Shown here in pieces: positions 35,806 through 64,000 of a stretch of 64,000 bases of DNA. The translations under genes and the position numbers were made by a program. The first letter of the stretch is position 1. The number at the start of each line of letters is the position of its first letter. The notes below the pieces were generated by a model. The model saw only the letters and a list, made by a program, of their open reading frames with translations, ran no database searches and was not told the origin of the DNA. Location of the stretch: contig NC_086382.1 in the NCBI RefSeq assembly GCF_036588685.1, positions 5,642,001 through 5,706,000 of the forward strand. Direction: 5' to 3'. Source of the stretch: Mytilus trossulus. Its lineage: Eukaryota.

Positions 35806-37680
35806 TACATACATTGGTATATAACGGTTTTTTTTGCCTTTCTAATTTTTCATTTGATTTTTGTGAACTATCTCTCCAGTCCTTTGTCCCAGTGCATCTA
35901 ATCGTGATTTAAAATGTAATTGATAAAATTGAAAAAAATCTGTGAAAAGTTTACTGTACTTGGTCCGAGTACACAGTTATATAGTCCTTAATGTGGACAG
36001 TGTGTTACTTGCCAATTTATGTTATACCCCTTCCAAATTTAATTCTCCATGTTTTATGCCTCATATAGCAAGTTGGGGGGTGAAATGACACTGTAAAAAA
36101 ATTTGGGTCATAAATATTTAGGTAAAGTAGTGATTAGGTCCAGCTGAAAAAGGTCAAAAATTAGCACTTCGGAAGCTGTCAAAAGATTTCAAGACCCCCT
36201 TAACACAAAATTGTCCATATTTTGAGTTAGAGCTGATGAAGTTTTCTATAATTTTGATATAATTTGTCCCAAAAGTAGTACAACACACTGTACAAATGTT
36301 ATTGAGAAAGCGCAGGTGAGATTTTTTTTATTTACATTTATTGTCTAAAAGAAATGCACTACGAAATAACTGTGTACTCGGACCTAAGAGGTGAAATCAG
36401 GAAATATAGAATCTGTACTTTGGCAACTTCCCTGAATGATCTGATGGTGTCAATTTGTCAAATAGCATAAAACTAAAGGATTTAAACTTTTATTTGATAG
36501 AATTTCTGCAAAAATTACCAATTTTGGCATTATATGGTCAAAATAAGCATTTCATAGCTTTTTCAATTTTGATGCATAAGTGGCATTTTGACTTTCTATC
36601 TGACATGTTTTCATGTGTCAATTTTTGTGTTTCTATGCTTTAATCCAGTTGTATTACTCATTTGTGAACTCTGAATCTACAGAAAAGAAGATTATCTCAG
36701 ACAATATGAGCAAAGTGTGTTGTATAAATGACCCTCATCTAACGCCCTGTTTGGATCAAGTTAAATGTGAGGAGCATGGTACATAAAAGTTGAAGTCCAT
36801 AATAAAGACCTCACTAAAATTGTATAAAAAGCATTTAACAATGTCTTTTGTACCTGTTTCATTTCACATAATATCTTTCTTTACCTCTTTAGGATACCAT
36901 GTGGTTCAAATATAAGCCTGTTGAGACTAAAATTGATGCAAGTATTTCACTAAAAAGTGAAAAATCTTTGTATCAGACCATACTGTCTGCTCAAAAAGTT
37001 GAATGTAATAGGCTTTTTGTGCTCAGATTTATTGTATCATGTCACCTGAGTATAGAAATGATAGAAAAGACACAATTTTTTTATTTCCTATAGCTTCAAT
37101 ATGCATTTTTAAATGTAAATATGTGCTATGGCCTAAATTGACCCTAAATTATTTTTAGTCATACTTGGCCTAAGACCCTTTTAAACTAATATGATATGTT
37201 ATTTGTAAGTTTTCTTTCCATTTAAAGTACATTAAGTACATATGTAAGGATTATTTATAATCAAAAAGCTTCACAAATTTAAAATTGCTGGAAAATATTA
37301 CATCTTCATGTAAGGCTCCCCTTCATTGGAAAACCTTCATTTTTAGGCACAGGCTCATATAAATTTGACTTTTGAAAAATTATGCTAAGTCTGATATATA
37401 AAATGAGTACTGTATTGCTTTAAATACATGATGTATTATATATTAAGGCATTTTAAAGTATATTTTTGCAATATTTTAATTTTAAAAGCCCCAAATGTTG
37501 ATAGTTGAAATTTCTCAATTTTAACGTCCAAATTTAACACGTAAAGTTGAATATAGAATTAATCATAGTGTCTATAATATATATCCTATTGCTATGAAAC
37601 TTTGTAAGCAGTCTTATAATATATTAAGCTTTTGTCATACCAAGTTTTATAAAGATTGGGCAACTTTTTCTATCCTATTA

Positions 37681-38131
37681 GGTCCGAGTACACAGTTATC
37701 GTCCTTTGATTTTCGTTGTCCACGAATATAGTCCTTAATGTGGACAGTGTGTTACTTGCCAATTTATGTTATACCCCTTCCAAATTTAATTCTCCATGTT
37801 TTATGCCTCATATAGCAAGTTGGGGGGTGAAATGACACTGTAAAAAAATTTGGGTCATAAATATTTAGGTAAAGTAGTGATTAGGTCCAGCTGAAAAAGG
37901 TCAAAAATTAGCACTTCGGAAGCTGTCAAAAGATTTCAAGACCCCCTTAACACAAAATTGTCCATATTTTGAGTTAGAGCTGATGAAGTTTTCTATAATT
38001 TTGATATAATTTGTCCCAAAAGTAGTACAACACACTGTACAAATGTTATTGAGAAAGCGCAGGTGAGATTTTTTTTATTTACATTTATTGTCTAAAAGAA
38101 ATGCACTACGAAATAACTGTGTACTCGGACC
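37681..38131. mobile_element. Representative array MITE, 19-bp perfect TIR GGTCCGAGTACACAGTTAT (22 bp with flanking TTA/TAA); 15 copies start at 35962, 37681, 39428, 41175, 42922, 45960, 48998, 50745, 52498, 54245, 55992, 57739, 59486, 61233, 62980
   Basis: ttaGGTCCGAGTACACAGTTAT ... ATAACTGTGTACTCGGACCtaa; no coding capacity; missing at two junctions. Confidence 0.85.
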
Positions 38132-41100
38132 TAAGAGGTGAAATCAGGAAATATAGAATCTGTACTTTGGCAACTTCCCTGAATGATCTGATGGTGTCAA
38201 TTTGTCAAATAGCATAAAACTAAAGGATTTAAACTTTTATTTGATAGAATTTCTGCAAAAATTACCAATTTTGGCATTATATGGTCAAAATAAGCATTTC
38301 ATAGCTTTTTCAATTTTGATGCATAAGTGGCATTTTGACTTTCTATCTGACATGTTTTCATGTGTCAATTTTTGTGTTTCTATGCTTTAATCCAGTTGTA
38401 TTACTCATTTGTGAACTCTGAATCTACAGAAAAGAAGATTATCTCAGACAATATGAGCAAAGTGTGTTGTATAAATGACCCTCATCTAACGCCCTGTTTG
38501 GATCAAGTTAAATGTGAGGAGCATGGTACATAAAAGTTGAAGTCCATAATAAAGACCTCACTAAAATTGTATAAAAAGCATTTAACAATGTCTTTTGTAC
38601 CTGTTTCATTTCACATAATATCTTTCTTTACCTCTTTAGGATACCATGTGGTTCAAATATAAGCCTGTTGAGACTAAAATTGATGCAAGTATTTCACTAA
38701 AAAGTGAAAAATCTTTGTATCAGACCATACTGTCTGCTCAAAAAGTTGAATGTAATAGGCTTTTTGTGCTCAGATTTATTGTATCATGTCACCTGAGTAT
38801 AGAAATGATAGAAAAGACACAATTTTTTTATTTCCTATAGCTTCAATATGCATTTTTAAATGTAAATATGTGCTATGGCCTAAATTGACCCTAAATTATT
38901 TTTAGTCATACTTGGCCTAAGACCCTTTTAAACTAATATGATATGTTATTTGTAAGTTTTCTTTCCATTTAAAGTACATTAAGTACATATGTAAGGATTA
39001 TTTATAATCAAAAAGCTTCACAAATTTAAAATTGCTGGAAAATATTACATCTTCATGTAAGGCTCCCCTTCATTGGAAAACCTTCATTTTTAGGCACAGG
39101 CTCATATAAATTTGACTTTTGAAAAATTATGCTAAGTCTGATATATAAAATGAGTACTGTATTGCTTTAAATACATGATGTATTATATATTAAGGCATTT
39201 TAAAGTATATTTTTGCAATATTTTAATTTTAAAAGCCCCAAATGTTGATAGTTGAAATTTCTCAATTTTAACGTCCAAATTTAACACGTAAAGTTGAATA
39301 TAGAATTAATCATAGTGTCTATAATATATATCCTATTGCTATGAAACTTTGTAAGCAGTCTTATAATATATTAAGCTTTTGTCATACCAAGTTTTATAAA
39401 GATTGGGCAACTTTTTCTATCCTATTAGGTCCGAGTACACAGTTATCGTCCTTTGATTTTCGTTGTCCACGAATATAGTCCTTAATGTGGACAGTGTGTT
39501 ACTTGCCAATTTATGTTATACCCCTTCCAAATTTAATTCTCCATGTTTTATGCCTCATATAGCAAGTTGGGGGGTGAAATGACACTGTAAAAAAATTTGG
39601 GTCATAAATATTTAGGTAAAGTAGTGATTAGGTCCAGCTGAAAAAGGTCAAAAATTAGCACTTCGGAAGCTGTCAAAAGATTTCAAGACCCCCTTAACAC
39701 AAAATTGTCCATATTTTGAGTTAGAGCTGATGAAGTTTTCTATAATTTTGATATAATTTGTCCCAAAAGTAGTACAACACACTGTACAAATGTTATTGAG
39801 AAAGCGCAGGTGAGATTTTTTTTATTTACATTTATTGTCTAAAAGAAATGCACTACGAAATAACTGTGTACTCGGACCTAAGAGGTGAAATCAGGAAATA
39901 TAGAATCTGTACTTTGGCAACTTCCCTGAATGATCTGATGGTGTCAATTTGTCAAATAGCATAAAACTAAAGGATTTAAACTTTTATTTGATAGAATTTC
40001 TTCAAAAATTACCAATTTTGGCATTATATGGTCAAAATAAGCATTTCATAGCTTTTTCAATTTTGATGCATAAGTGGCATTTTGACTTTCTATCTGACAT
40101 GTTTTCATGTGTCAATTTTTGTGTTTCTATGCTTTAATCCAGTTGTATTACTCATTTGTGAACTCTGAATCTACAGAAAAGAAGATTATCTCAGACAATA
40201 TGAGCAAAGTGTGTTGTATAAATGACCCTCATCTAACGCCCTGTTTGGATCAAGTTAAATGTGAGGAGCATGGTACATAAAAGTTGAAGTCCATAATAAA
40301 GACCTCACTAAAATTGTATAAAAAGCATTTAACAATGTCTTTTGTACCTGTTTCATTTCACATAATATCTTTCTTTACCTCTTTAGGATACCATGTGGTT
40401 CAAATATAAGCCTGTTGAGACTAAAATTGATGCAAGTATTTCACTAAAAAGTGAAAAATCTTTGTATCAGACCATACTGTCTGCTCAAAAAGTTGAATGT
40501 AATAGGCTTTTTGTGCTCAGATTTATTGTATCATGTCACCTGAGTATAGAAATGATAGAAAAGACACAATTTTTTTATTTCCTATAGCTTCAATATGCAT
40601 TTTTAAATGTAAATATGTGCTATGGCCTAAATTGACCCTAAATTATTTTTAGTCATACTTGGCCTAAGACCCTTTTAAACTAATATGATATGTTATTTGT
40701 AAGTTTTCTTTCCATTTAAAGTACATTAAGTACATATGTAAGGATTATTTATAATCAAAAAGCTTCACAAATTTAAAATTGCTGGAAAATATTACATCTT
40801 CATGTAAGGCTCCCCTTCATTGGAAAACCTTCATTTTTAGGCACAGGCTCATATAAATTTGACTTTTGAAAAATTATGCTAAGTCTGATATATAAAATGA
40901 GTACTGTATTGCTTTAAATACATGATGTATTATATATTAAGGCATTTTAAAGTATATTTTTGCAATATTTTAATTTTAAAAGCCCCAAATGTTGATAGTT
41001 GAAATTTCTCAATTTTAACGTCCAAATTTAACACGTAAAGTTGAATATAGAATTAATCATAGTGTCTATAATATATATCCTATTGCTATGAAACTTTGTA

Positions 41101-44100
41101 AGCAGTCTTATAATATATTAAGCTTTTGTCATACCAAGTTTTATAAAGATTGGGCAACTTTTTCTATCCTATTAGGTCCGAGTACACAGTTATCGTCCTT
41201 TGATTTTCGTTGTCCACGAATATAGTCCTTAATGTGGACAGTGTGTTACTTGCCAATTTATGTTATACCCCTTCCAAATTTAATTCTCCATGTTTTATGC
41301 CTCATATAGCAAGTTGGGGGGTGAAATGACACTGTAAAAAAATTTGGGTCATAAATATTTAGGTAAAGTAGTGATTAGGTCCAGCTGAAAAAGGTCAAAA
41401 ATTAGCACTTCGGAAGCTGTCAAAAGATTTCAAGACCCCCTTAACACAAAATTGTCCATATTTTGAGTTAGAGCTGATGAAGTTTTCTATAATTTTGATA
41501 TAATTTGTCCCAAAAGTAGTACAACACACTGTACAAATGTTATTGAGAAAGCGCAGGTGAGATTTTTTTTATTTACATTTATTGTCTAAAAGAAATGCAC
41601 TACGAAATAACTGTGTACTCGGACCTAAGAGGTGAAATCAGGAAATATAGAATCTGTACTTTGGCAACTTCCCTGAATGATCTGATGGTGTCAATTTGTC
41701 AAATAGCATAAAACTAAAGGATTTAAACTTTTATTTGATAGAATTTCTGCAAAAATTACCAATTTTGGCATTATATGGTCAAAATAAGCATTTCATAGCT
41801 TTTTCAATTTTGATGCATAAGTGGCATTTTGACTTTCTATCTGACATGTTTTCATGTGTCAATTTTTGTGTTTCTATGCTTTAATCCAGTTGTATTACTC
41901 ATTTGTGAACTCTGAATCTACAGAAAAGAAGATTATCTCAGACAATATGAGCAAAGTGTGTTGTATAAATGACCCTCATCTAACGCCCTGTTTGGATCAA
42001 GTTAAATGTGAGGAGCATGGTACATAAAAGTTGAAGTCCATAATAAAGACCTCACTAAAATTGTATAAAAAGCATTTAACAATGTCTTTTGTACCTGTTT
42101 CATTTCACATAATATCTTTCTTTACCTCTTTAGGATACCATGTGGTTCAAATATAAGCCTGTTGAGACTAAAATTGATGCAAGTATTTCACTAAAAAGTG
42201 AAAAATCTTTGTATCAGACCATACTGTCTGCTCAAAAAGTTGAATGTAATAGGCTTTTTGTGCTCAGATTTATTGTATCATGTCACCTGAGTATAGAAAT
42301 GATAGAAAAGACACAATTTTTTTATTTCCTATAGCTTCAATATGCATTTTTAAATGTAAATATGTGCTATGGCCTAAATTGACCCTAAATTATTTTTAGT
42401 CATACTTGGCCTAAGACCCTTTTAAACTAATATGATATGTTATTTGTAAGTTTTCTTTCCATTTAAAGTACATTAAGTACATATGTAAGGATTATTTATA
42501 ATCAAAAAGCTTCACAAATTTAAAATTGCTGGAAAATATTACATCTTCATGTAAGGCTCCCCTTCATTGGAAAACCTTCATTTTTAGGCACAGGCTCATA
42601 TAAATTTGACTTTTGAAAAATTATGCTAAGTCTGATATATAAAATGAGTACTGTATTGCTTTAAATACATGATGTATTATATATTAAGGCATTTTAAAGT
42701 ATATTTTTGCAATATTTTAATTTTAAAAGCCCCAAATGTTGATAGTTGAAATTTCTCAATTTTAACGTCCAAATTTAACACGTAAAGTTGAATATAGAAT
42801 TAATCATAGTGTCTATAATATATATCCTATTGCTATGAAACTTTGTAAGCAGTCTTATAATATATTAAGCTTTTGTCATACCAAGTTTTATAAAGATTGG
42901 GCAACTTTTTCTATCCTATTTGGTCCGAGTACACAGTTATCGTCCTTTGATTTTCGTTGTCCACGAATATAGTCCTTAATGTGGACAGTGTGTTACTTGC
43001 CAATTTATGTTATACCCCTTCCAAATTTAATTCTCCATGTTTTATGCCTCATATAGCAAGTTGGGGGGTGAAATGACACTGTAAAAAAATTTGGGTCATA
43101 AATATTTAGGTAAAGTAGTGATTAGGTCCAGCTGAAAAAGGTCAAAAATTAGCACTTCGGAAGCTGTCAAAAGATTTCAAGACCCCCTTAACACAAAATT
43201 GTCCATATTTTGAGTTAGAGCTGATGAAGTTTTCTATAATTTTGATATAATTTGTCCCAAAAGTAGTACAACACACTGTACAAATGTTATTGAGAAAGCG
43301 CAGGTGAGATTTTTTTTATTTACATTTATTGTCTAAAAGAAATGCACTACGAAATAACTGTGTACTCGGACCTAAGAGGTGAAATCAGGAAATATAGAAT
43401 CTGTACTTTGGCAACTTCCCTGAATGATCTGATGGTGTCAATTTGTCAAATAGCATAAAACTAAAGGATTTAAACTTTTATTTGATAGAATTTCTGCAAA
43501 AATTACCAATTTTGGCATTATATGGTCAAAATAAGCATTTCATAGCTTTTTCAATTTTGATGCATAAGTGGCATTTTGACTTTCTATCTGACATGTTTTC
43601 ATGTGTCAATTTTTGTGTTTCTATGCTTTAATCCAGTTGTATTACTCATTTGTGAACTCTGAATCTACAGAAAAGAAGATTATCTCAGACAATATGAGCA
43701 AAGTGTGTTGTATAAATGACCCTCATCTAACGCCCTGTTTGGATCAAGTTAAATGTGAGGAGCATGGTACATAAAAGTTGAAGTCCATAATAAAGACCTC
43801 ACTAAAATTGTATAAAAAGCATTTAACAATGTCTTTTGTACCTGTTTCATTTCACATAATATCTTTCTTTACCTCTTTAGGATACCATGTGGTTCAAATA
43901 TAAGCCTGTTGAGACTAAAATTGATGCAAGTATTTCACTAAAAAGTGAAAAATCTTTGTATCAGACCATACTGTCTGCTCAAAAAGTTGAATGTAATAGG
44001 CTTTTTGTGCTCAGATTTATTGTATCATGTCACCTGAGTATAGAAATGATAGAAAAGACACAATTTTTTTATTTCCTATAGCTTCAATATGCATTTTTAA

Positions 44101-47100
44101 ATGTAAATATGTGCTATGGCCTAAATTGACCCTAAATTATTTTTAGTCATACTTGGCCTAAGACCCTTTTAAACTAATATGATATGTTATTTGTAAGTTT
44201 TCTTTCCATTTAAAGTACATTAAGTACATATGTAAGGATTATTTATAATCAAAAAGCTTCACAAATTTAAAATTGCTGGAAAATATTACATCTTCATGTA
44301 AGGCTCCCCTTCATTGGAAAACCTTCATTTTTAGGCACAGGCTCATATAAATTTGACTTTTGAAAAATTATGCTAAGTCTGATATATAAAATGAGTACTG
44401 TATTGCTTTAAATACATGATGTATTATATATTAAGGCATTTTAAAGTATATTTTTGCAATATTTTAATTTTAAAAGCCCCAAATGTTGATAGTTGAAATT
44501 TCTCAATTTTAACGTCCAAATTTAACACGTAAAGTTGAATATAGAATTAATCATAGTGTCTATAATATATATCCTATTGCTATGAAACTTTGTAAGCAGT
44601 CTTATAATATATTAAGCTTTTGTCATACCAAGTTTTATAAAGATTGGGCAACTTTTTCTATCCTAAGAGGTGAAATCAGGAAATATAGAATCTGTACTTT
44701 GGCAACTTCCCTGAATGATCTGATGGTGTCAATTTGTCAAATAGCATAAAACTAAAGGATTTAAACTTTTATTTGATAGAATTTCTGCAAAAATTACCAA
44801 TTTTGGCATTATATGGTCAAAATAAGCATTTCATAGCTTTTTCAATTTTGATGCATAAGTGGCATTTTGACTTTCTATCTGACATGTTTTCATGTGTCAA
44901 TTTTTGTGTTTCTATGCTTTAATCCAGTTGTATTACTCATTTGTGAACTCTGAATCTACAGAAAAGAAGATTATCTCAGACAATATGAGCAAAGTGTGTT
45001 GTATAAATGACCCTCATCTAACGCCCTGTTTGGATCAAGTTAAATGTGAGGAGCATGGTACATAAAAGTTGAAGTCCATAATAAAGACCTCACTAAAATT
45101 GTATAAAAAGCATTTAACAATGTCTTTTGTACCTGTTTCATTTCACATAATATCTTTCTTTACCTCTTTAGGATACCATGTGGTTCAAATATAAGCCTGT
45201 TGAGACTAAAATTGATGCAAGTATTTCACTAAAAAGTGAAAAATCTTTGTATCAGACCATACTGTCTGCTCAAAAAGTTGAATGTAATAGGCTTTTTGTG
45301 CTCAGATTTATTGTATCATGTCACCTGAGTATAGAAATGATAGAAAAGACACAATTTTTTTATTTCCTATAGCTTCAATATGCATTTTTAAATGTAAATA
45401 TGTGCTATGGCCTAAATTGACCCTAAATTATTTTTAGTCATACTTGGCCTAAGACCCTTTTAAACTAATATGATATGTTATTTGTAAGTTTTCTTTCCAT
45501 TTAAAGTACATTAAGTACATATGTAAGGATTATTTATAATCAAAAAGCTTCACAAATTTAAAATTGCTGGAAAATATTACATCTTCATGTAAGGCTCCCC
45601 TTCATTGGAAAACCTTCATTTTTAGGCACAGGCTCATATAAATTTGACTTTTGAAAAATTATGCTAAGTCTGATATATAAAATGAGTACTGTATTGCTTT
45701 AAATACATGATGTATTATATATTAAGGCATTTTAAAGTATATTTTTGCAATATTTTAATTTTAAAAGCCCCAAATGTTGATAGTTGAAATTTCTCAATTT
45801 TAACGTCCAAATTTAACACGTAAAGTTGAATATAGAATTAATCATAGTGTCTATAATATATATCCTATTGCTATGAAACTTTGTAAGCAGTCTTATAATA
45901 TATTAAGCTTTTGTCATACCAAGTTTTATAAAGATTGGGCAACTTTTTCTATCCTATTAGGTCCGAGTACACAGTTATCGTCCTTTGATTTTCGTTGTCC
46001 ACGAATATAGTCCTTAATGTGGACAGTGTGTTACTTGCCAATTTATGTTATACCCCTTCCAAATTTAATTCTCCATGTTTTATGCCTCATATAGCAAGTT
46101 GGGGGGTGAAATGACACTGTAAAAAAAATTGGGTCATAAATATTTAGGTAAAGTAGTGATTAGGTCCAGCTGAAAAAGGTCAAAAATTAGCACTTCGGAA
46201 GCTGTCAAAAGATTTCAAGACCCCCTTAACACAAAATTGTCCATATTTTGAGTTAGAGCTGATGAAGTTTTCTATAATTTTGATATAATTTGTCCCAAAA
46301 GTAGTACAACACACTGTACAAATGTTATTGAGAAAGCGCAGGTGAGATTTTTTTTATTTACATTTATTGTCTAAAAGAAATGCACTACGAAATAACTGTG
46401 TACTCGGACCTAAGAGGTGAAATCAGGAAATATAGAATCTGTACTTTGGCAACTTCCCTGAATGATCTGATGGTGTCAATTTGTCAAATAGCATAAAACT
46501 AAAGGATTTAAACTTTTATTTGATAGAATTTCTGCAAAAATTACCAATTTTGGCATTATATGGTCAAAATAAGCATTTCATAGCTTTTTCAATTTTGATG
46601 CATAAGTGGCATTTTGACTTTCTATCTGACATGTTTTCATGTGTCAATTTTTGTGTTTCTATGCTTTAATCCAGTTGTATTACTCATTTGTGAACTCTGA
46701 ATCTACAGAAAAGAAGATTATCTCAGACAATATGAGCAAAGTGTGTTGTATAAATGACCCTCATCTAACGCCCTGTTTGGATCAAGTTAAATGTGAGGAG
46801 CATGGTACATAAAAGTTGAAGTCCATAATAAAGACCTCACTAAAATTGTATAAAAAGCATTTAACAATGTCTTTTGTACCTGTTTCATTTCACATAATAT
46901 CTTTCTTTACCTCTTTAGGATACCATGTGGTTCAAATATAAGCCTGTTGAGACTAAAATTGATGCAAGTATTTCACTAAAAAGTGAAAAATCTTTGTATC
47001 AGACCATACTGTCTGCTCAAAAAGTTGAATGTAATAGGCTTTTTGTGCTCAGATTTATTGTATCATGTCACCTGAGTATAGAAATGATAGAAAAGACACA

Positions 47101-50100
47101 ATTTTTTTATTTCCTATAGCTTCAATATGCATTTTTAAATGTAAATATGTGCTATGGCCTAAATTGACCCTAAATTATTTTTAGTCATACTTGGCCTAAG
47201 ACCCTTTTAAACTAATATGATATGTTATTTGTAAGTTTTCTTTCCATTTAAAGTACATTAAGTACATATGTAAGGATTATTTATAATCAAAAAGCTTCAC
47301 AAATTTAAAATTGCTGGAAAATATTACATCTTCATGTAAGGCTCCCCTTCATTGGAAAACCTTCATTTTTAGGCACAGGCTCATATAAATTTGACTTTTG
47401 AAAAATTATGCTAAGTCTGATATATAAAATGAGTACTGTATTGCTTTAAATACATGATGTATTATATATTAAGGCATTTTAAAGTATATTTTTGCAATAT
47501 TTTAATTTTAAAAGCCCCAAATGTTGATAGTTGAAATTTCTCAATTTTAACGTCCAAATTTAACACGTAAAGTTGAATATAGAATTAATCATAGTGTCTA
47601 TAATATATATCCTATTGCTATGAAACTTTGTAAGCAGTCTTATAATATATTAAGCTTTTGTCATACCAAGTTTTATAAAGATTGGGCAACTTTTTCTATC
47701 CTAAGAGGTGAAATCAGGAAATATAGAATCTGTACTTTGGCAACTTCCCTGAATGATCTGATGGTGTCAATTTGTCAAATAGCATAAAACTAAAGGATTT
47801 AAACTTTTATTTGATAGAATTTCTGCAAAAATTACCAATTTTGGCATTATATGGTCAAAATAAGCATTTCATAGCTTTTTCAATTTTGATGCATAAGTGG
47901 CATTTTGACTTTCTATCTGACATGTTTTCATGTGTCAATTTTTGTGTTTCTATGCTTTAATCCAGTTGTATTACTCATTTGTGAACTCTGAATCTACAGA
48001 AAAGAAGATTATCTCAGACAATATGAGCAAAGTGTGTTGTATAAATGACCCTCATCTAACGCCCTGTTTGGATCAAGTTAAATGTGAGGAGCATGGTACA
48101 TAAAAGTTGAAGTCCATAATAAAGACCTCACTAAAATTGTATAAAAAGCATTTAACAATGTCTTTTGTACCTGTTTCATTTCACATAATATCTTTCTTTA
48201 CCTCTTTAGGATACCATGTGGTTCAAATATAAGCCTGTTGAGACTAAAATTGATGCAAGTATTTCACTAAAAAGTGAAAAATCTTTGTATCAGACCATAC
48301 TGTCTGCTCAAAAAGTTGAATGTAATAGGCTTTTTGTGCTCAGATTTATTGTATCATGTCACCTGAGTATAGAAATGATAGAAAAGACACAATTTTTTTA
48401 TTTCCTATAGCTTCAATATGCATTTTTAAATGTAAATATGTGCTATGGCCTAAATTGACCCTAAATTATTTTTAGTCATACTTGGCCTAAGACCCTTTTA
48501 AACTAATATGATATGTTATTTGTAAGTTTTCTTTCCATTTAAAGTACATTAAGTACATATGTAAGGATTATTTATAATCAAAAAGCTTCACAAATTTAAA
48601 ATTGCTGGAAAATATTACATCTTCATGTAAGGCTCCCCTTCATTGGAAAACCTTCATTTTTAGGCACAGGCTCATATAAATTTGACTTTTGAAAAATTAT
48701 GCTAAGTCTGATATATAAAATGAGTACTGTATTGCTTTAAATACATGATGTATTATATATTAAGGCATTTTAAAGTATATTTTTGCAATATTTTAATTTT
48801 AAAAGCCCCAAATGTTGATAGTTGAAATTTCTCAATTTTAACGTCCAAATTTAACACGTAAAGTTGAATATAGAATTAATCATAGTGTCTATAATATATA
48901 TCCTATTGCTATGAAACTTTGTAAGCAGTCTTATAATATATTAAGCTTTTGTCATACCAAGTTTTATAAAGATTGGGCAAATTTTTCTATCCTATTAGGT
49001 CCGAGTACACAGTTATCGTCCTTTGATTTTCGTTGTCCACGAATATAGTCCTTAATGTGGACAGTGTGTTACTTGCCAATTTATGTTATACCCCTTCCAA
49101 ATTTAATTCTCCATGTTTTATGCCTCATATAGCAAGTTGGGGGGTGAAATGACACTGTAAAAAAATTTGGGTCATAAATATTTAGGTAAAGTAGTGATTA
49201 GGTCCAGCTGAAAAAGGTCAAAAATTAGCACTTCGGAAGCTGTCAAAAGATTTCAAGACCCCCTTAACACAAAATTGTCCATATTTTGAGTTAGAGCTGA
49301 TGAAGTTTTCTATAATTTTGATATAATTTGTCCCAAAAGTAGTACAACACACTGTACAAATGTTATTGAGAAAGCGCAGGTGAGATTTTTTTTATTTACA
49401 TTTATTGTCTAAAAGAAATGCACTACGAAATAACTGTGTACTCGGACCTAAGAGGTGAAATCAGGAAATATAGAATCTGTACTTTGGCAACTTCCCTGAA
49501 TGATCTGATGGTGTCAATTTGTCAAATAGCATAAAACTAAAGGATTTAAACTTTTATTTGATAGAATTTCTGCAAAAATTACCAATTTTGGCATTATATG
49601 GTCAAAATAAGCATTTCATAGCTTTTTCAATTTTGATGCATAAGTGGCATTTTGACTTTCTATCTGACATGTTTTCATGTGTCAATTTTTGTGTTTCTAT
49701 GCTTTAATCCAGTTGTATTACTCATTTGTGAACTCTGAATCTACAGAAAAGAAGATTATCTCAGACAATATGAGCAAAGTGTGTTGTATAAATGACCCTC
49801 ATCTAACGCCCTGTTTGGATCAAGTTAAATGTGAGGAGCATGGTACATAAAAGTTGAAGTCCATAATAAAGACCTCACTAAAATTGTATAAAAAGCATTT
49901 AACAATGTCTTTTGTACCTGTTTCATTTCACATAATATCTTTCTTTACCTCTTTAGGATACCATGTGGTTCAAATATAAGCCTGTTGAGACTAAAATTGA
50001 TGCAAGTATTTCACTAAAAAGTGAAAAATCTTTGTATCAGACCATACTGTCTGCTCAAAAAGTTGAATGTAATAGGCTTTTTGTGCTCAGATTTATTGTA

Positions 50101-52312: not shown

Positions 52313-52320
52313 TACATGTA
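52313..52320. other. TA->TACATGTA 6-bp insertion (Tc1/mariner-type excision footprint) in one repeat unit
   Basis: gttgaTACATGTAgttgaa versus gttgaTAgttgaa in the other units; it explains the single 1753-bp period. Confidence 0.75.
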
Positions 52321-55300: not shown

Positions 55301-58300
55301 CTCAAAAAGTTGAATGTAATAGGCTTTTTGTGCTCAGATTTATTGTATCATGTCACCTGAGTATAGAAATGATAGAAAAGACACAATTTTTTTATTTCCT
55401 ATAGCTTCAATATGCATTTTTAAATGTAAATATGTGCTATGGCCTAAATTGACCCTAAATTATTTTTAGTCATACTTGGCCTAAGACCCTTTTAAACTAA
55501 TATGATATGTTATTTGTAAGTTTTCTTTCCATTTAAAGTACATTAAGTACATATGTAAGGATTATTTATAATCAAAAAGCTTCACAAATTTAAAATTGCT
55601 GGAAAATATTACATCTTCATGTAAGGCTCCCCTTCATTGGAAAACCTTCATTTTTAGGCACAGGCTCATATAAATTTGACTTTTGAAAAATTATGCTAAG
55701 TCTGATATATAAAATGAGTACTGTATTGCTTTAAATACATGATGTATTATATATTAAGGCATTTTAAAGTATATTTTTGCAATATTTTAATTTTAAAAGC
55801 CCCAAATGTTGATAGTTGAAATTTCTCAATTTTAACGTCCAAATTTAACACGTAAAGTTGAATATAGAATTAATCATAGTGTCTATAATATATATCCTAT
55901 TGCTATGAAACTTTGTAAGCAGTCTTATAATATATTAAGCTTTTGTCATACCAAGTTTTATAAAGATTGGGCAACTTTTTCTATCCTATTAGGTCCGAGT
56001 ACACAGTTATCGTCCTTTGATTTTCGTTGTCCACGAATATAGTCCTTAATGTGGACAGTGTGTTACTTGCCAATTTATGTTATACCCCTTCCAAATTTAA
56101 TTCTCCATGTTTTATGCCTCATATAGCAAGTTGGGGGGTGAAATGACACTGTAAAAAAATTTGGGTCATAAATATTTAGGTAAAGTAGTGATTAGGTCCA
56201 GCTGAAAAAGGTCAAAAATTAGCACTTCGGAAGCTGTCAAAAGATTTCAAGACCCCCTTAACACAAAATTGTCCATATTTTGAGTTAGAGCTGATGAAGT
56301 TTTCTATAATTTTGATATAATTTGTCCCAAAAGTAGTACAACACACTGTACAAATGTTATTGAGAAAGCGCAGGTGAGATTTTTTTTATTTACATTTATT
56401 GTCTAAAAGAAATGCACTACGAAATAACTGTGTACTCGGACCTAAGAGGTGAAATCAGGAAATATAGAATCTGTACTTTGGCAACTTCCCTGAATGATCT
56501 GATGGTGTCAATTTGTCAAATAGCATAAAACTAAAGGATTTAAACTTTTATTTGATAGAATTTCTGCAAAAATTACCAATTTTGGCATTATATGGTCAAA
56601 ATAAGCATTTCATAGCTTTTTCAATTTTGATGCATAAGTGGCATTTTGACTTTCTATCTGACATGTTTTCATGTGTCAATTTTTGTGTTTCTATGCTTTA
56701 ATCCAGTTGTATTACTCATTTGTGAACTCTGAATCTACAGAAAAGAAGATTATCTCAGACAATATGAGCAAAGTGTGTTGTATAAATGACCCTCATCTAA
56801 CGCCCTGTTTGGATCAAGTTAAATGTGAGGAGCATGGTACATAAAAGTTGAAGTCCATAATAAAGACCTCACTAAAATTGTATAAAAAGCATTTAACAAT
56901 GTCTTTTGTACCTGTTTCATTTCACATAATATCTTTCTTTACCTCTTTAGGATACCATGTGGTTCAAATATAAGCCTGTTGAGACTAAAATTGATGCAAG
57001 TATTTCACTAAAAAGTGAAAAATCTTTGTATCAGACCATACTGTCTGCTCAAAAAGTTGAATGTAATAGGCTTTTTGTGCTCAGATTTATTGTATCATGT
57101 CACCTGAGTATAGAAATGATAGAAAAGACACAATTTTTTTATTTCCTATAGCTTCAATATGCATTTTTAAATGTAAATATGTGCTATGGCCTAAATTGAC
57201 CCTAAATTATTTTTAGTCATACTTGGCCTAAGACCCTTTTAAACTAATATGATATGTTATTTGTAAGTTTTCTTTCCATTTAAAGTACATTAAGTACATA
57301 TGTAAGGATTATTTATAATCAAAAAGCTTCACAAATTTAAAATTGCTGGAAAATATTACATCTTCATGTAAGGCTCCCCTTCATTGGAAAACCTTCATTT
57401 TTAGGCACAGGCTCATATAAATTTGACTTTTGAAAAATTATGCTAAGTCTGATATATAAAATGAGTACTGTATTGCTTTAAATACATGATGTATTATATA
57501 TTAAGGCATTTTAAAGTATATTTTTGCAATATTTTAATTTTAAAAGCCCCAAATGTTGATAGTTGAAATTTCTCAATTTTAACGTCCAAATTTAACACGT
57601 AAAGTTGAATATAGAATTAATCATAGTGTCTATAATATATATCCTATTGCTATGAAACTTTGTAAGCAGTCTTATAATATATTAAGCTTTTGTCATACCA
57701 AGTTTTATAAAGATTGGGCAACTTTTTCTATCCTATTAGGTCCGAGTACACAGTTATCGTCCTTTGATTTTCGTTGTCCACGAATATAGTCCTTAATGTG
57801 GACAGTGTGTTACTTGCCAATTTATGTTATACCCCTTCCAAATTTAATTCTCCATGTTTTATGCCTCATATAGCAAGTTGGGGGGTGAAATGACACTGTA
57901 AAAAAATTTGGGTCATAAATATTTAGGTAAAGTAGTGATTAGGTCCAGCTGAAAAAGGTCAAAAATTAGCACTTCGGAAGCTGTCAAAAGATTTCAAGAC
58001 CCCCTTAACACAAAATTGTCCATATTTTGAGTTAGAGCTGATGAAGTTTTCTATAATTTTGATATAATTTGTCCCAAAAGTAGTACAACACACTGTACAA
58101 ATGTTATTGAGAAAGCGCAGGTGAGATTTTTTTTATTTACATTTATTGTCTAAAAGAAATGCACTACGAAATAACTGTGTACTCGGACCTAAGAGGTGAA
58201 ATCAGGAAATATAGAATCTGTACTTTGGCAACTTCCCTGAATGATCTGATGGTGTCAATTTGTCAAATAGCATAAAACTAAAGGATTTAAACTTTTATTT

Positions 58301-61300
58301 GATAGAATTTCTGCAAAAATTACCAATTTTGGCATTATATGGTCAAAATAAGCATTTCATAGCTTTTTCAATTTTGATGCATAAGTGGCATTTTGACTTT
58401 CTATCTGACATGTTTTCATGTGTCAATTTTTGTGTTTCTATGCTTTAATCCAGTTGTATTACTCATTTGTGAACTCTGAATCTACAGAAAAGAAGATTAT
58501 CTCAGACAATATGAGCAAAGTGTGTTGTATAAATGACCCTCATCTAACGCCCTGTTTGGATCAAGTTAAATGTGAGGAGCATGGTACATAAAAGTTGAAG
58601 TCCATAATAAAGACCTCACTAAAATTGTATAAAAAGCATTTAACAATGTCTTTTGTACCTGTTTCATTTCACATAATATCTTTCTTTACCTCTTTAGGAT
58701 ACCATGTGGTTCAAATATAAGCCTGTTGAGACTAAAATTGATGCAAGTATTTCACTAAAAAGTGAAAAATCTTTGTATCAGACCATACTGTCTGCTCAAA
58801 AAGTTGAATGTAATAGGCTTTTTGTGCTCAGATTTATTGTATCAGGTCACCTGAGTATAGAAATGATAGAAAAGACACAATTTTTTTATTTCCTATAGCT
58901 TCAATATGCATTTTTAAATGTAAATATGTGCTATGGCCTAAATTGACCCTAAATTATTTTTAGTCATACTTGGCCTAAGACCCTTTTAAACTAATATGAT
59001 ATGTTATTTGTAAGTTTTCTTTCCATTTAAAGTACATTAAGTACATATGTAAGGATTATTTATAATCAAAAAGCTTCACAAATTTAAAATTGCTGGAAAA
59101 TATTACATCTTCATGTAAGGCTCCCCTTCATTGGAAAACCTTCATTTTTAGGCACAGGCTCATATAAATTTGACTTTTGAAAAATTATGCTAAGTCTGAT
59201 ATATAAAATGAGTACTGTATTGCTTTAAATACATGATGTATTATATATTAAGGCATTTTAAAGTATATTTTTGCAATATTTTAATTTTAAAAGCCCCAAA
59301 TGTTGATAGTTGAAATTTCTCAATTTTAACGTCCAAATTTAACACGTAAAGTTGAATATAGAATTAATCATAGTGTCTATAATATATATCCTATTGCTAT
59401 GAAACTTTGTAAGCAGTCTTATAATATATTAAGCTTTTGTCATACCAAGTTTTATAAAGATTGGGCAACTTTTTCTATCCTATTAGGTCCGAGTACACAG
59501 TTATCGTCCTTTGATTTTCGTTGTCCACGAATATAGTCCTTAATGTGGACAGTGTGTTACTTGCCAATTTATGTTATACCCCTTCCAAATTTAATTCTCC
59601 ATGTTTTATGCCTCATATAGCAAGTTGGGGGGTGAAATGACACTGTACAAAAATTTGGGTCATAAATATTTAGGTAAAGTAGTGATTAGGTCCAGCTGAA
59701 AAAGGTCAAAAATTAGCACTTCGGAAGCTGTCAAAAGATTTCAAGACCCCCTTAACACAAAATTGTCCATATTTTGAGTTAGAGCTGATGAAGTTTTCTA
59801 TAATTTTGATATAATTTGTCCCAAAAGTAGTACAACACACTGTACAAATGTTATTGAGAAAGCGCAGGTGAGATTTTTTTTATTTACATTTATTGTCTAA
59901 AAGAAATGCACTACGAAATAACTGTGTACTCGGACCTAAGAGGTGAAATCAGGAAATATAGAATCTGTACTTTGGCAACTTCCCTGAATGATCTGATGGT
60001 GTCAATTTGTCAAATAGCATAAAACTAAAGGATTTAAACTTTTATTTGATAGAATTTCTGCAAAAATTACCAATTTTGGCATTATATGGTCAAAATAAGC
60101 ATTTCATAGCTTTTTCAATTTTGATGCATAAGTGGCATTTTGACTTTCTATCTGACATGTTTTCATGTGTCAATTTTTGTGTTTCTATGCTTTAATCCAG
60201 TTGTATTACTCATTTGTGAACTCTGAATCTACAGAAAAGAAGATTATCTCAGACAATATGAGCAAAGTGTGTTGTATAAATGACCCTCATCTAACGCCCT
60301 GTTTGGATCAAGTTAAATGTGAGGAGCATGGTACATAAAAGTTGAAGTCCATAATAAAGACCTCACTAAAATTGTATAAAAAGCATTTAACAATGTCTTT
60401 TGTACCTGTTTCATTTCACATAATATCTTTCTTTACCTCTTTAGGATACCATGTGGTTCAAATATAAGCCTGTTGAGACTAAAATTGATGCAAGTATTTC
60501 ACTAAAAAGTGAAAAATCTTTGTATCAGACCATACTGTCTGCTCAAAAAGTTGAATGTAATAGGCTTTTTGTGCTCAGATTTATTGTATCATGTCACCTG
60601 AGTATAGAAATGATAGAAAAGACACAATTTTTTTATTTCCTATAGCTTCAATATGCATTTTTAAATGTAAATATGTGCTATGGCCTAAATTGACCCTAAA
60701 TTATTTTTAGTCATACTTGGCCTAAGACCCTTTTAAACTAATATGATATGTTATTTGTAAGTTTTCTTTCCATTTAAAGTACATTAAGTACATATGTAAG
60801 GATTATTTATAATCAAAAAGCTTCACAAATTTAAAATTGCTGGAAAATATTACATCTTCATGTAAGGCTCCCCTTCATTGGAAAACCTTCATTTTTAGGC
60901 ACAGGCTCATATAAATTTGACTTTTGAAAAATTATGCTAAGTCTGATATATAAAATGAGTACTGTATTGCTTTAAATACATGATGTATTATATATTAAGG
61001 CATTTTAAAGTATATTTTTGCAATATTTTAATTTTAAAAGCCCCAAATGTTGATAGTTGAAATTTCTCAATTTTAACGTCCAAATTTAACACGTAAAGTT
61101 GAATATAGAATTAATCATAGTGTCTATAATATATATCCTATTGCTATGAAACTTTGTAAGCAGTCTTATAATATATTAAGCTTTTGTCATACCAAGTTTT
61201 ATAAAGATTGGGCAACTTTTTCTATCCTATTAGGTCCGAGTACACAGTTATCGCCCTTTGATTTTCGTTGTCCACGAATATAGTCCTTAATGTGGACAGT

Positions 61301-64000
61301 GTGTTACTTGCCAATTTATGTTATACCCCTTCCAAATTTAATTCTCCATGTTTTATGCCTCATATAGCAAGTTGGGGGGTGAAATGACACTGTAAAAAAA
61401 TTTGGGTCATAAATATTTAGGTAAAGTAGTGATTAGGTCCAGCTGAAAAAGGTCAAAAATTAGCACTTCGGAAGCTGTCAAAAGATTTCAAGACCCCCTT
61501 AACACAAAATTGTCCATATTTTGAGTTAGAGCTGATGAAGTTTTCTATAATTTTGATATAATTTGTCCCAAAAGTAGTACAACACACTGTACAAATGTTA
61601 TTGAGAAAGCGCAGGTGAGATTTTTTTTATTTACATTTATTGTCTAAAAGAAATGCACTACGAAATAACTGTGTACTCGGACCTAAGAGGTGAAATCAGG
61701 AAATATAGAATCTGTACTTTGGCAACTTCCCTGAATGATCTGATGGTGTCAATTTGTCAAATAGCATAAAACTAAAGGATTTAAACTTTTATTTGATAGA
61801 ATTTCTGCAAAAATTACCAATTTTGGCATTATATGGTCAAAATAAGCATTTCATAGCTTTTTCAATTTTGATGCATAAGTGGCATTTTGACTTTCTATCT
61901 GACATGTTTTCATGTGTCAATTTTTGTGTTTCTATGCTTTAATCCAGTTGTATTACTCATTTGTGAACTCTGAATCTACAGAAAAGAAGATTATCTCAGA
62001 CAATATGAGCAAAGTGTGTTGTATAAATGACCCTCATCTAACGCCCTGTTTGGATCAAGTTAAATGTGAGGAGCATGGTACATAAAAGTTGAAGTCCATA
62101 ATAAAGACCTCACTAAAATTGTATAAAAAGCATTTAACAATGTCTTTTGTACCTGTTTCATTTCACATAATATCTTTCTTTACCTCTTTAGGATACCATG
62201 TGGTTCAAATATAAGCCTGTTGAGACTAAAATTGATGCAAGTATTTCACTAAAAAGTGAAAAATCTTTGTATCAGACCATACTGTCTGCTCAAAAAGTTG
62301 AATGTAATAGGCTTTTTGTGCTCAGATTTATTGTATCATGTCACCTGAGTATAGAAATGATAGAAAAGACACAATTTTTTTATTTCCTATAGCTTCAATA
62401 TGCATTTTTAAATGTAAATATGTGCTATGGCCTAAATTGACCCTAAATTATTTTTAGTCATACTTGGCCTAAGACCCTTTTAAACTAATATGATATGTTA
62501 TTTGTAAGTTTTCTTTCCATTTAAAGTACATTAAGTACATATGTAAGGATTATTTATAATCAAAAAGCTTCACAAATTTAAAATTGCTGGAAAATATTAC
62601 ATCTTCATGTAAGGCTCCCCTTCATTGGAAAACCTTCATTTTTAGGCACAGGCTCATATAAATTTGACTTTTGAAAAATTATGCTAAGTCTGATATATAA
62701 AATGAGTACTGTATTGCTTTAAATACATGATGTATTATATATTAAGGCATTTTAAAGTATATTTTTGCAATATTTTAATTTTAAAAGCCCCAAATGTTGA
62801 TAGTTGAAATTTCTCAATTTTAACGTCCAAATTTAACACGTAAAGTTGAATATAGAATTAATCATAGTGTCTATAATATATATCCTATTGCTATGAAACT
62901 TTGTAAGCAGTCTTATAATATATTAAGCTTTTGTCATACCAAGTTTTATAAAGATTGGGCAACTTTTTCTATCCTATTAGGTCCGAGTACACAGTTATCG
63001 TCCTTTGATTTTCGTTGTCCACGAATATAGTCCTTAATGTGGACAGTGTGTTACTTGCCAATTTATGTTATACCCCTTCCAAATTTAATTCTCCATGTTT
63101 TATGCCTCATATAGCAAGTTGGGGGGTGAAATGACACTGTAAAAAAATTTGGGTCATAAATATTTAGGTAAAGTAGTGATTAGGTCCAGCTGAAAAAGGT
63201 CAAAAATTAGCACTTCGGAAGCTGTCAAAAGATTTCAAGACCCCCTTAACACAAAATTGTCCATATTTTGAGTTAGAGCTGATGAAGTTTTCTATAATTT
63301 TGATATAATTTGTCCCAAAAGTAGTACAACACACTGTACAAATGTTATTGAGAAAGCGCAGGTGAGATTTTTTTTATTTACATTTATTGTCTAAAAGAAA
63401 TGCACTACGAAATAACTGTGTACTCGGACCTAAGAGGTGAAATCAGGAAATATAGAATCTGTACTTTGGCAACTTCCCTGAATGATCTGATGGTGTCAAT
63501 TTGTCAAATAGCATAAAACTAAAGGATTTAAACTTTTATTTGATAGAATTTCTGCAAAAATTACCAATTTTGGCATTATATGGTCAAAATAAGCATTTCA
63601 TAGCTTTTTCAATTTTGATGCATAAGTGGCATTTTGACTTTCTATCTGACATGTTTTCATGTGTCAATTTTTGTGTTTCTATGCTTTAATCCAGTTGTAT
63701 TACTCATTTGTGAACTCTGAATCTACAGAAAAGAAGATTATCTCAGACAATATGAGCAAAGTGTGTTGTATAAATGACCCTCATCTAACGCCCTGTTTGG
63801 ATCAAGTTAAATGTGAGGAGCATGGTACATAAAAGTTGAAGTCCATAATAAAGACCTCACTAAAATTGTATAAAAAGCATTTAACAATGTCTTTTGTACC
63901 TGTTTCATTTCACATAATATCTTTCTTTACCTCTTTAGGATACCATGTGGTTCAAATATAAGCCTGTTGAGACTAAAATTGATGCAAGTATTTCACTAAA

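What the first reader, a model, noticed from the sequence alone, without database searches (positions are those of the whole stretch)
35962..64000. Young macrosatellite built from a MITE + spacer module, starting exactly at a MITE terminal inverted repeat
Seen: at least 28 kb of near-identical 1,747-bp units, each a 451-bp element with perfect 19-bp TIRs plus a ~1.29-kb spacer. The left edge of the array is the first base of a left TIR (tgtactt|GGTCC), and its flank is unrelated to the spacer end (cctatta|GGTCC) that precedes internal copies. Inference: the MITE ends defined the array. Either a block of satellite was moved here as a composite/macro-transposon using the outermost TIRs, or two MITE copies flanking a captured segment seeded expansion by unequal exchange or rolling-circle amplification. 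Either would be a transposon-end-driven way of creating or relocating satellite arrays.
Basis: partly seen in the sequence, partly recalled or inferred. Interest (0 to 1): 0.8.

Follow-up and report, generated by a model that had tools for sequence, protein, structure and literature searches.

The report
Mussel KolobokP transposon multimer array
The 1.75-kb "macrosatellite" is a real, very young tandem array of a non-coding mussel DNA transposon whose 451-bp end-repeats each carry their own inverted ends; this composite-like transposon type (KolobokP) and its habit of forming such arrays were described in 2022, so it is a large example of a known thing.

Summary
From window 35962 a near-identical array runs 35,505 bp: 19 copies of a 451-bp element (M, perfect 19-bp inverted ends) alternating with a 1,296-bp segment (S). 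It starts at the first base of an M end.

Genome-wide, M occurs alone, as M-S-M, and as M-(S-M)n blocks up to 71 kb. Perfect 4-bp target duplications flank 7 of 10 solos and 13 of 17 blocks; offset control gave 21 of 624. M-less S-S junctions come in four structural forms, each losing M plus 0-5 flanking bases, as excision footprints would.

This matches the KolobokP "composite-like" DNA transposons of Kojima & Bao 2022: ~450-bp terminal direct repeats with their own inverted ends, GG..CC termini, short target duplications, solo repeats, multimers, repeat-less junctions with microdeletions, and abundance in bivalves. M is the terminal repeat, S a non-coding internal region, the array a multimer.

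No autonomous partner was linked. Other first-reader notes of this scan flagged similar composites elsewhere in this genome. Interest is low to moderate.

The parts
35958..35961 (.). ACTT, the presumed left copy of the 4-bp target-site duplication (inferred; the right copy is hidden by the gap)
   Evidence: The flank reads ..ctgtactt|GGTCC. The 4-bp duplication rule comes from 20 of 27 other insertions.
35962..36384 (+). First terminal repeat (M/LTDR), 423 bp; both 19-bp inverted ends are intact and there is a 28-bp deletion just inside the left end
36385..37680 (+). First internal segment (S/INT), 1,296 bp, non-coding
   Evidence: No ORF over 64 aa, no Pfam match over a curated cut-off, and no Rfam hit.
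37681..38131 (+). Reference full-length M/LTDR, 451 bp; inverted ends at 37681-37699 and 38113-38131; termini GG..CC
35962..64000 (+). Multimer array (M-S)n, 15 M copies in the window; it continues to C10:5713466 (19 M, 20 full S plus one cut S; 35,505 bp)
44654..44676 (+). M-less S-S junction, type A (TATCC-TAAGA-GGTG): M plus 5 flanking bases absent
47692..47714 (+). Second M-less S-S junction, same type A; together the two make two adjacent 3,038-bp M-S-S units
52313..52320 (+). 6-bp insertion giving TACATGTA in one S copy (1,302-bp S)

Best explanation
The array is a multimer, (LTDR-INT)n-LTDR, of a non-autonomous KolobokP-type 'composite-like' cut-and-paste DNA transposon of a Mytilus mussel. 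The '451-bp MITE' is the element's long terminal direct repeat (LTDR), which carries its own 19-bp inverted ends. The '1.29-kb spacer' is its non-coding internal region (INT).

Inferred history: one LTDR-bounded unit inserted at target ACTT. It then grew in place by unequal exchange between the repeated LTDR/INT modules to at least 19 LTDRs, so recently that units differ at only a few bases. Some internal LTDRs were cut out, leaving INT-INT junctions with small one-sided deletions; one such product was then duplicated as a 3,038-bp unit.

Shown: the architecture, the target duplications, the solo, monomer and multimer forms, and the several footprint types.

Inferred: the insertion at this locus, growth by unequal crossover, and the enzyme being a Kolobok DDD/E transposase (with a possible role for the His-Me nuclease) supplied in trans.
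For: Architecture. M is 451 bp with perfect 19-bp inverted ends and GG..CC termini.

Dispersal. There are 895 exact end matches genome-wide (457 + 438) against 0 for the reversed control.

Forms. Solo M copies sit in unrelated flanks. M-S-M and M-S-M-S-M blocks are bounded exactly by M ends.

Target duplications. A perfect 4-bp duplication flanks 7 of 10 solos and 12 of 16 blocks, with 0 of 26 matching at 5 bp and an offset control of 21 of 624. The 71-kb C7 array is also flanked by ACAT/ACAT, giving 13 of 17 blocks.

Junctions. The S-to-M and M-to-S junctions are length-invariant in all 100 listed of 170 hits and all 100 listed of 173 hits, spread over at least 55 loci. The 55 pattern hits for M-less junctions include 54 true S-S junctions that fall into several forms: TATTA 29, TAAGA 9, TATTAAGA 11, TATAATAAGA 4 and TTTTA 1, which are M plus 5, 5, 2 or 0 flanking bases lost; the 55th hit is unrelated. 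All length variation among 14 S monomers from 4 loci sits at that junction. The C95 and C10:69.0M blocks contain M-less junctions inside a single target duplication.

Coding. No ORF, Pfam or Rfam signal in the unit.

Published match. Kojima & Bao 2022 report LTDR about 450 bp, own TIRs of 11-18 bp, 5'-RR..YY-3' termini, target duplications of 3-5 bp, solo LTDRs, (LTDR-INT)n-LTDR and LTDR-(INT)n-LTDR forms, INT-INT microdeletions at either tip, LTDR excision taking 1-5 flanking bp on one side, non-autonomous families of 1.7-3.3 kb, and richness in bivalves including Mytilus. The genome has at least 150 His-Me finger nuclease (PF05551) matches, many in 3.6-4.65-kb tandem arrays.
Against: No autonomous element sharing this LTDR or its inverted ends was identified. 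None of the 150 scored PF05551 matches lies in the one candidate, the 3.3-kb segment between two M copies at C3:92.13 Mb, and that segment could not be fetched. Superfamily membership therefore rests on architecture, not on a transposase link.

The inverted end is 19 bp, against the published range of up to 18.

Four of 17 blocks and 3 of 10 solos lack a matching duplication.

The two M copies of one old block are closer to each other (98.7%) than to any other M (at most 96.5%). That is also what an LTR retroelement would show.

The right end of this particular array is unassembled.
Confidence: 0.82

Rival explanations
1. It is an opportunistic composite unrelated to KolobokP. A MITE of some other 4-bp-duplication superfamily inserted twice, about 1.3 kb apart, around host DNA. 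The outer ends then mobilised the pair, and arrays grew by unequal exchange.
For: It shares the structural evidence of the best explanation: blocks flanked by target duplications, solos, and footprints. No transposase link to Kolobok was obtained. S has no detectable relation to any coding sequence.
Against: The element matches KolobokP in several independent, specific traits at once: the about 450-bp repeat length class, RR..YY termini, short TIRs, duplication length, one-sided microdeletions, and a bivalve host with many KolobokP-type nuclease arrays.
Confidence: 0.09
2. It is a non-autonomous LTR-type retroelement (TRIM/LARD-like). M would be the LTR and S the internal domain. Solos would arise by LTR-LTR recombination, and arrays by unequal exchange between LTRs.
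For: Terminal direct repeats, a 4-bp duplication, many solos, and tandem forms that share one repeat. Within-element M-M identity is higher than between elements. Tandem TRIMs and solo repeats are reported in bivalves (PMC6934838, passages read).
Against: The termini are GG..CC, not TG..CA. The inverted ends are a perfect 19 bp. By inspection there is no polypurine tract next to the 3' repeat and no TGG-type primer site next to the 5' repeat. There are several independent precise losses of M within 0-5 bp of its ends, which reverse-transcribing elements do not produce.
Confidence: 0.05
3. S was an ordinary 1.29-kb satellite first, and M later inserted site-specifically into its monomers.
For: S-S arrays without M exist on C7, C14 and C95. 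An S-S joint with a 1,291-bp period is also seen in contigs of two other organisms' runs.
Against: No S-S variant gives the observed M flanks (TATTA|M|TAAGA) with a 4-bp duplication. The M-S junctions are invariant while the S-S junctions vary. The S-S arrays examined lie inside M-bounded blocks flanked by target duplications: C95, C10:69.0M and C7.
Confidence: 0.03

Closest known systems
KolobokP composite-like DNA transposons (Kojima & Bao, Mob DNA 2022; PMC9587614; outline/abstract, Results parts 1-2 and Discussion part 1 read)
   Same: LTDR-INT-LTDR architecture with an about 450-bp LTDR that has its own short inverted ends; RR..YY termini; 3-5-bp target duplications; solo LTDRs; (LTDR-INT)n-LTDR and LTDR-(INT)n-LTDR multimers; INT-INT junctions with small one-sided deletions; non-autonomous families of 1.7-3.3 kb; abundance in bivalves, including Mytilus.
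   Different: This family is non-coding and its autonomous partner was not found here. The inverted end is 19 bp, against up to 18 reported. The arrays are very long (at least 35.5 kb here, 71 kb on C7). The loss at INT-INT junctions is 0, 2 or 5 bp, against '3 or 4' as the usual published case. Whether this exact family is already in their supplementary tables or in Repbase could not be checked, because supplements are closed.
Tandem LTR-retrotransposon / TRIM arrays (PMC6934838 passages; PMC11899658 seen only as a search listing)
   Same: Terminal direct repeats, solo repeats, tandem units sharing one repeat, and growth by unequal exchange.
   Different: No TG..CA termini and no PBS/PPT. The repeat has long perfect inverted ends and is itself lost precisely, as by excision.
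Bacterial composite transposons (IS-flanked), as discussed in PMC9587614
   Same: Two copies of a self-sufficient end module mobilise what lies between them, and the module can also move alone.
   Different: Here the modules carry no transposase, are always in direct orientation, and form long multimers.
Satellites born from transposon dimers or multimers (McGurk & Barbash 2018, PMC5932611, seen only as a search listing and as cited in review passages of PMC12628747)
   Same: A transposon in tandem provides the substrate for expansion into a satellite-like array.
   Different: Those dimers arise mainly from double insertions at one site. Here the tandem-prone architecture is built into the element.
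Tandem-repeat-containing MITEs of bivalves (DTC84; PMC3879986, seen only as a search listing)
   Same: A bivalve mobile element that carries and disperses tandem repeats.
   Different: There the short repeats lie between two arms of one MITE. Here the whole MITE-like repeat is part of each 1.75-kb unit.

Membership tests
KolobokP (Kolobok superfamily) | [quoted passage not shown] | tested here: met
   M-S-M at C6, C1:92.29M, C2:27.66M, C11, C4 and C5, each with a perfect 4-bp duplication
KolobokP (Kolobok superfamily) | LTDR length about 450 bp (or about 660 bp) | tested here: met
   451 bp in 14 of 15 window copies
KolobokP (Kolobok superfamily) | Each LTDR has its own short terminal inverted repeats (11-18 bp reported) | tested here: met
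   Perfect 19-bp inverted ends, one base above the reported range
KolobokP (Kolobok superfamily) | Termini 5'-RR ... YY-3' | tested here: met
   GG...CC
KolobokP (Kolobok superfamily) | Target duplications of 3-4 or 4-5 bp without strong target specificity | tested here: met
   4 bp in 20 of 27 insertions, 0 of 26 at 5 bp, 12 different tetramers, TACT the most frequent
KolobokP (Kolobok superfamily) | Solo LTDRs, (LTDR-INT)n-LTDR and LTDR-(INT)n-LTDR multimers | tested here: met
   Solos; multimers on C1, C2, C3, C7 and C10; a block with a run of M-less S-S junctions between terminal M copies on C95
KolobokP (Kolobok superfamily) | INT-INT junctions / LTDR excision with a few flanking bases lost on one side | tested here: met
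   Junction forms lose 5 bp (left tip), 5 bp (right tip), 2 bp or 0 bp
KolobokP (Kolobok superfamily) | [quoted passage not shown] | tested here: inconclusive
   The genome holds at least 150 PF05551 matches, many in 3.6-4.65-kb arrays.
LTR retrotransposon derivative (TRIM/LARD) | LTR termini TG..CA | tested here: not met
   GG..CC
LTR retrotransposon derivative (TRIM/LARD) | Primer binding site after the 5' repeat and polypurine tract before the 3' repeat | tested here: not met
   By inspection only: S starts TAAGAGGTGAAATC and ends ..TTTTTCTATCCTATTA. No tRNA-complement search was run.
MITE (generic) | Short, non-coding, inverted ends, target duplication, many dispersed copies | tested here: met
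   True of M alone, but M is also the terminal repeat of a larger element
Classical satellite DNA | Long head-to-tail arrays of a non-coding unit | tested here: met
   At least 35.5 kb here and 71 kb on C7, though each examined array is one transposon insertion flanked by a target duplication

The most novel reading that the evidence does not exclude
Non-coding KolobokP derivatives may be a regular birth route for mussel macrosatellites. A single 2.2-kb insertion grows in place to tens of kilobases because nuclease or transposase supplied in trans by the genome's many autonomous KolobokP copies keeps cutting at the LTDRs and provokes unequal sister-chromatid repair. LTDR excision then strips the repeats out, leaving a 1,291-1,296-bp satellite with no visible transposon ends. 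The C7 array, where runs of different footprint types repeat as higher-order units, would be that process caught midway.
Probability: 0.25. Interest if true: 0.5.

Novelty: new member of a known kind. Interest (0 to 1): 0.27.

Why it matters
It assigns a striking 'macrosatellite' to a published transposon type. It also gives a clean, countable example of that type's predicted behaviour in a chromosome-level mussel assembly:
- arrays of 35 kb and 71 kb, where every array with both ends assembled lies inside one 4-bp target duplication;
- several independent footprints where the terminal repeat was lost.

For annotation, such arrays should be masked as KolobokP multimers rather than reported as new satellites. 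For biology, the family is a good substrate for testing the 'induced unequal crossover' idea, because it is non-coding and must depend on enzymes supplied in trans.

Tried and rejected
Tandem Repeats Finder cannot see the 1.7-kb period because its longest period is 500, so the array was mapped by exact end matches in a script.

Right end. I followed the array past the window. It stops at a 100-N gap, so the composite-model prediction for this locus is untestable. The unplaced contig C338, made of the same variant, turned up by itself and was not used to fill anything.

LTR reading. I held this at about 35% until. It was rejected on termini, the lack of PBS/PPT by inspection, and the several precise M losses.

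S-first satellite. Rejected because no S-S variant yields the M flanks with a 4-bp duplication, and because the S-S arrays examined sit inside M-bounded blocks.

Rfam and Pfam scans of the unit found nothing.

Superfamily by literature. A search for Sola and Ginger termini gave no usable table. My recollection that Sola and Ginger make 4-bp duplications is from memory only and became irrelevant.

Literature for this exact Mytilus family. Searches found no description of it. Its supplementary family tables are closed, so the family may already be catalogued there or in Repbase.

Autonomous partner. There is no + / - pair of exact ends 1-10 kb apart among the first 100 listed end matches, which cover C1 and part of C2. 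The PF05551 search lists no match inside the C3 candidate; 130 of its 280 candidates were not scored.

Reads. All runs were Logan contigs, so depth cannot give copy number or confirm array length.

One C14 flank fetched at a guessed coordinate (L106) showed no unit homology, so the left end of the C14 array stays unresolved. The C14 array and the C7 low-end first guess (L096) were left out of the tally. C7 was added.
Full report
1. What is in the window

The 19-bp string at 35962 and its reverse complement each occur 15 times between 35962 and 63430. They pair up as the ends of a 451-bp element, M; the first copy is 423 bp. M copies are separated by a 1,296-bp segment, S. Fourteen unit spacings were measured:
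- ten are 1,747 bp;
- one is 1,719 bp, because the first M has a 28-bp deletion just inside its left end;
- one is 1,753 bp, from a 6-bp insertion in S;
- two are 3,038 bp.

The 3,038-bp units are M-S-S. At their S-S joint, M and 5 further bases are missing, giving TATCC-TAAGA-GGTG instead of TATCC-TATTA[M]TAAGA-GGTG. Against the majority sequence the 14 full M copies carry 3 substitutions in all, and the S copies carry 5. The 36 kb left of 35962 has no similarity to the unit (best hit 19 bp, E=0.13), and the flank reads ..ctgtactt|GGTCC.

2. The right end

The window is G000:C10:5642001-5706000. The array continues with four more units that match the majority sequence exactly. It stops at C10:5713466, at position 1,048 of S, against 100 N. 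The sequence beyond the gap is unrelated and contains a tRNA-Leu gene.

The assembled array is 35,505 bp, with 19 M copies, 20 full S copies and one cut S. Its true length and right junction are unknown. I did not try to recover the hidden junction.

In run X1 a 577-bp contig with no differences and a depth of 18.6 (neighbouring single-copy contigs are about 20) crosses the left junction. X1 may be the sample the assembly was made from. All runs were contigs, so depth gives no copy number. The summed depth over M and S is 10^3 to 10^5 times that of the flank in runs of four differently coded organisms, so both modules are abundant in related taxa.

3. The family in the genome

The 19-mer has 895 exact matches (457 + 438), against 0 for the reversed control. 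Sampling loci gave the following.

- Solo M copies in unrelated flanks, 92-99.6% identical to the window's M.
- M-S-M and M-S-M-S-M blocks that start at M base 1 and end at M base 451.
- Longer blocks on C1, C2, C3, C7, C10 and C95.

For target duplications, the last 4 bases of the left flank equal the first 4 of the right flank in 7 of 10 solos and 12 of 16 blocks. None of the 26 matches at 5 bases. The same comparison at offsets of 1-12 bases matches in 21 of 624 trials. The 71.3-kb C7 block (C7:522613-593917) adds ACAT/ACAT, giving 13 of 17 blocks.

The failures among blocks are C1:57.36M, C2:25.59M, C1:99.84M and C2:83.5M. The failures among solos are L066, L067 and C3:19.16M. Three partial solos (L062, L064 and the internally deleted L070) were seen; L070 is counted, while L062 and L064 are not because their left ends are missing. 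Twelve different tetramers occur, with TACT five times.

The S-to-M junction pattern has 170 matches and the M-to-S pattern 173 (controls 0). All 100 listed of each have the same length, with 98 of 100 reading TATTA and 94 of 100 reading TAAGA. The listed S-to-M hits fall in at least 55 separate loci on 12 contigs (C1-C11 and C13), mostly with one junction each, which means M-S-M. So S has been spread through the genome inside M-bounded units, all descended from one M-S-M ancestor. Long arrays are the exception.

4. M is cut out

A pattern spanning the S-S joint finds 55 places (control 1 + 1). The forms are:
- TATTA: 29
- TAAGA: 9, including the two in the window
- TATTAAGA: 11
- TATAATAAGA: 4
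- TTTTA: 1
- unrelated: 1

Relative to TATTA[M]TAAGA these are, in order: M plus the right 5 bases lost; M plus the left 5 bases lost; M plus 2 bases lost; and M alone lost with one base changed.

Anchor-to-anchor lengths of 14 monomers from 4 loci are 1,291, 1,294, 1,296 or 1,747 bp, fully accounted for by the junction form. All length variation therefore sits at the place M occupies. None of the M-less forms can produce the observed M flanks through a 4-bp duplication. The M-less joints also lie inside blocks bounded by M and a single duplication: C95 with TAAT, C10:69.0M with TACT, and C7 with ACAT.

They are therefore derived, by several independent precise removals of M. That is what excision footprints of a cut-and-paste element look like, and a retroelement does not produce them. 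On C7 the forms recur in a fixed order, which indicates later amplification of already-excised units.

5. What it is

A note of this scan on another window named 'KolobokP', and led to Kojima & Bao 2022 (PMC9587614). I read the outline and abstract, Results parts 1-2 and Discussion part 1. They describe a Kolobok lineage, especially rich in bivalves (with Mytilus galloprovincialis and M. coruscus listed), with these features:
- an internal region between two long terminal direct repeats of about 450 or about 660 bp;
- each repeat has its own 11-18-bp inverted ends and 5'-RR..YY-3' termini;
- target duplications of 3-4 or 4-5 bp;
- many solo LTDRs;
- multimers of the forms (LTDR-INT)n-LTDR and LTDR-(INT)n-LTDR;
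- INT-INT joints with microdeletions at either tip;
- LTDR excision removing 1-5 flanking bases on one side;
- non-autonomous families of 1,738-3,261 bp.

Every architectural feature was tested here and met: M is 451 bp, has 19-bp ends with GG..CC termini, makes 4-bp duplications, and the M-S-M monomer is 2,198 bp. S has no ORF over 64 aa, no Pfam match over a curated cut-off, and no Rfam hit. This is therefore a non-autonomous family.

The genome has at least 150 matches to the His-Me finger nuclease model PF05551, many in tandem arrays with periods of 3.6-4.65 kb. KolobokP-type coding multimers are thus plentiful and could supply enzymes in trans.

What I could not do is tie M to a particular autonomous family. 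One block at C3:92.127-92.141 Mb has a 5,508-bp period that reads M-S-M-X, with X equal to 3,310 bp. M-X-M would be 4,212 bp, inside the published 4.0-4.7-kb range for autonomous elements.

6. How the array most likely formed

Shown: the left end is an LTDR end. The family inserts as LTDR-bounded units with 4-bp duplications. Blocks of all sizes keep one duplication. LTDRs are lost precisely.

Inferred: a unit inserted at ACTT, about 1.3 kb from the start codon of a broken RING/B-box gene copy. It then expanded in place by unequal exchange, or by the nuclease-induced unequal repair that Kojima & Bao propose. One LTDR was excised, and the resulting M-S-S unit was duplicated. The near-identity of the units points to very recent growth, although assembly polishing of a repeat cannot be excluded.

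At several positions the array differs from the variant carried by most of the summed depth of laid contigs, for example at 36019, 36293 and 36319. It is therefore a private sub-lineage, not the family's master sequence.

7. Rivals

It is disfavoured by the many specific matches to KolobokP (0.09).
- An LTR-type element is disfavoured by the termini, the missing PBS/PPT and the excision footprints. The higher M-M identity within old blocks would fit it, but that is equally expected from homogenisation in units that expand and contract (0.05).
- An S-first satellite is disfavoured by the junction logic and by the bounded arrays (0.03).

8. Verdict

It is a member of a transposon type published in 2022, multimers and repeat excision included.

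The novel content is limited. It consists of an uncharacterised (or at least unverified) non-autonomous family in this mussel, array sizes of at least 35 kb and 71 kb inside single target duplications, and a clear series of footprint types.

Other first-reader notes of this scan, none followed up, describe what look like the same or sister composites elsewhere in this genome. I did not check them.

Noticed in passing
window 7858-34686, minus strand: Tandem cluster of five intronless paralogous genes with a RING finger and B-box. Three are intact at 642-649 aa (7858-9807, 15007-16944, 22083-24011). Two are split or broken (27443-29214, 32936-34686). The array starts about 1.3 kb beyond the start codon of the last, broken copy.
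   Followed up: partly
window 52313-52320: One S copy has a 6-bp insertion that turns GATAGTTG into GATACATGTAGTTG, that is TA-CATG-TA. From memory this resembles a Tc1/mariner-type excision footprint (a TA duplication with a few element bases left between). It is absent from all sister units.
   Followed up: no
L061 8567-10000 (G000:C10:5713567-5715000): Right of the assembly gap lies a repeat of about 1.3 kb: the first 110 bases recur at 9888-10000. It carries a tRNA-Leu gene (9551-9631, minus strand) and a second tRNA-like stretch near 8680-8800 that ARAGORN did not call.
   Followed up: partly
G000:C8:72,902,000-73,119,000: More than 60 intact 153-aa His-Me finger nuclease ORFs (PF05551) in one array of over 200 kb, with periods of 3,610 and 4,073 bp. 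The 463-bp difference is about one terminal repeat, the same repeat-present/repeat-lost pattern as the 1,747 and 1,291 bp seen here. Similar arrays are on C1:96.35M, C2:79.37M, C4:92.1M, C10:3.62M, C48, C303, C319 and C504.
   Followed up: no
G000:C3:92127354-92140567: Block flanked by AACT/AACT with a 5,508-bp period that reads M-S-M-X, with X of 3,310 bp unread. It is the best candidate for an autonomous or larger relative that shares this terminal repeat.
   Followed up: partly
G000:C7:522613-593917: A 71.3-kb array of the same family inside one ACAT duplication. The M-less junction types recur in a fixed order (about four TATTA, two to four TATTAAGA, one TAAGA), which is a higher-order repeat of roughly 9-12 kb.
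   Followed up: partly
G000:C95:229936-241489 (L059, L060, L095): Block flanked by TAAT/TAAT in which most internal M copies are gone (four TATAATAAGA joints and one TAAGA). One terminal M is interrupted by a 290-bp insertion. One S is interrupted by about 2.6 kb of foreign DNA, with a 4-base overlap of S coordinates at its edges.
   Followed up: partly
runs X2, X3, X6 laid on window 34462-37680: M and S are both present at very high summed contig depth in runs of three other coded organisms. X3 and X6 also hold an S-S joint with a 1,291-bp period, so the family and its M-less form are shared among related mussels.
   Followed up: partly
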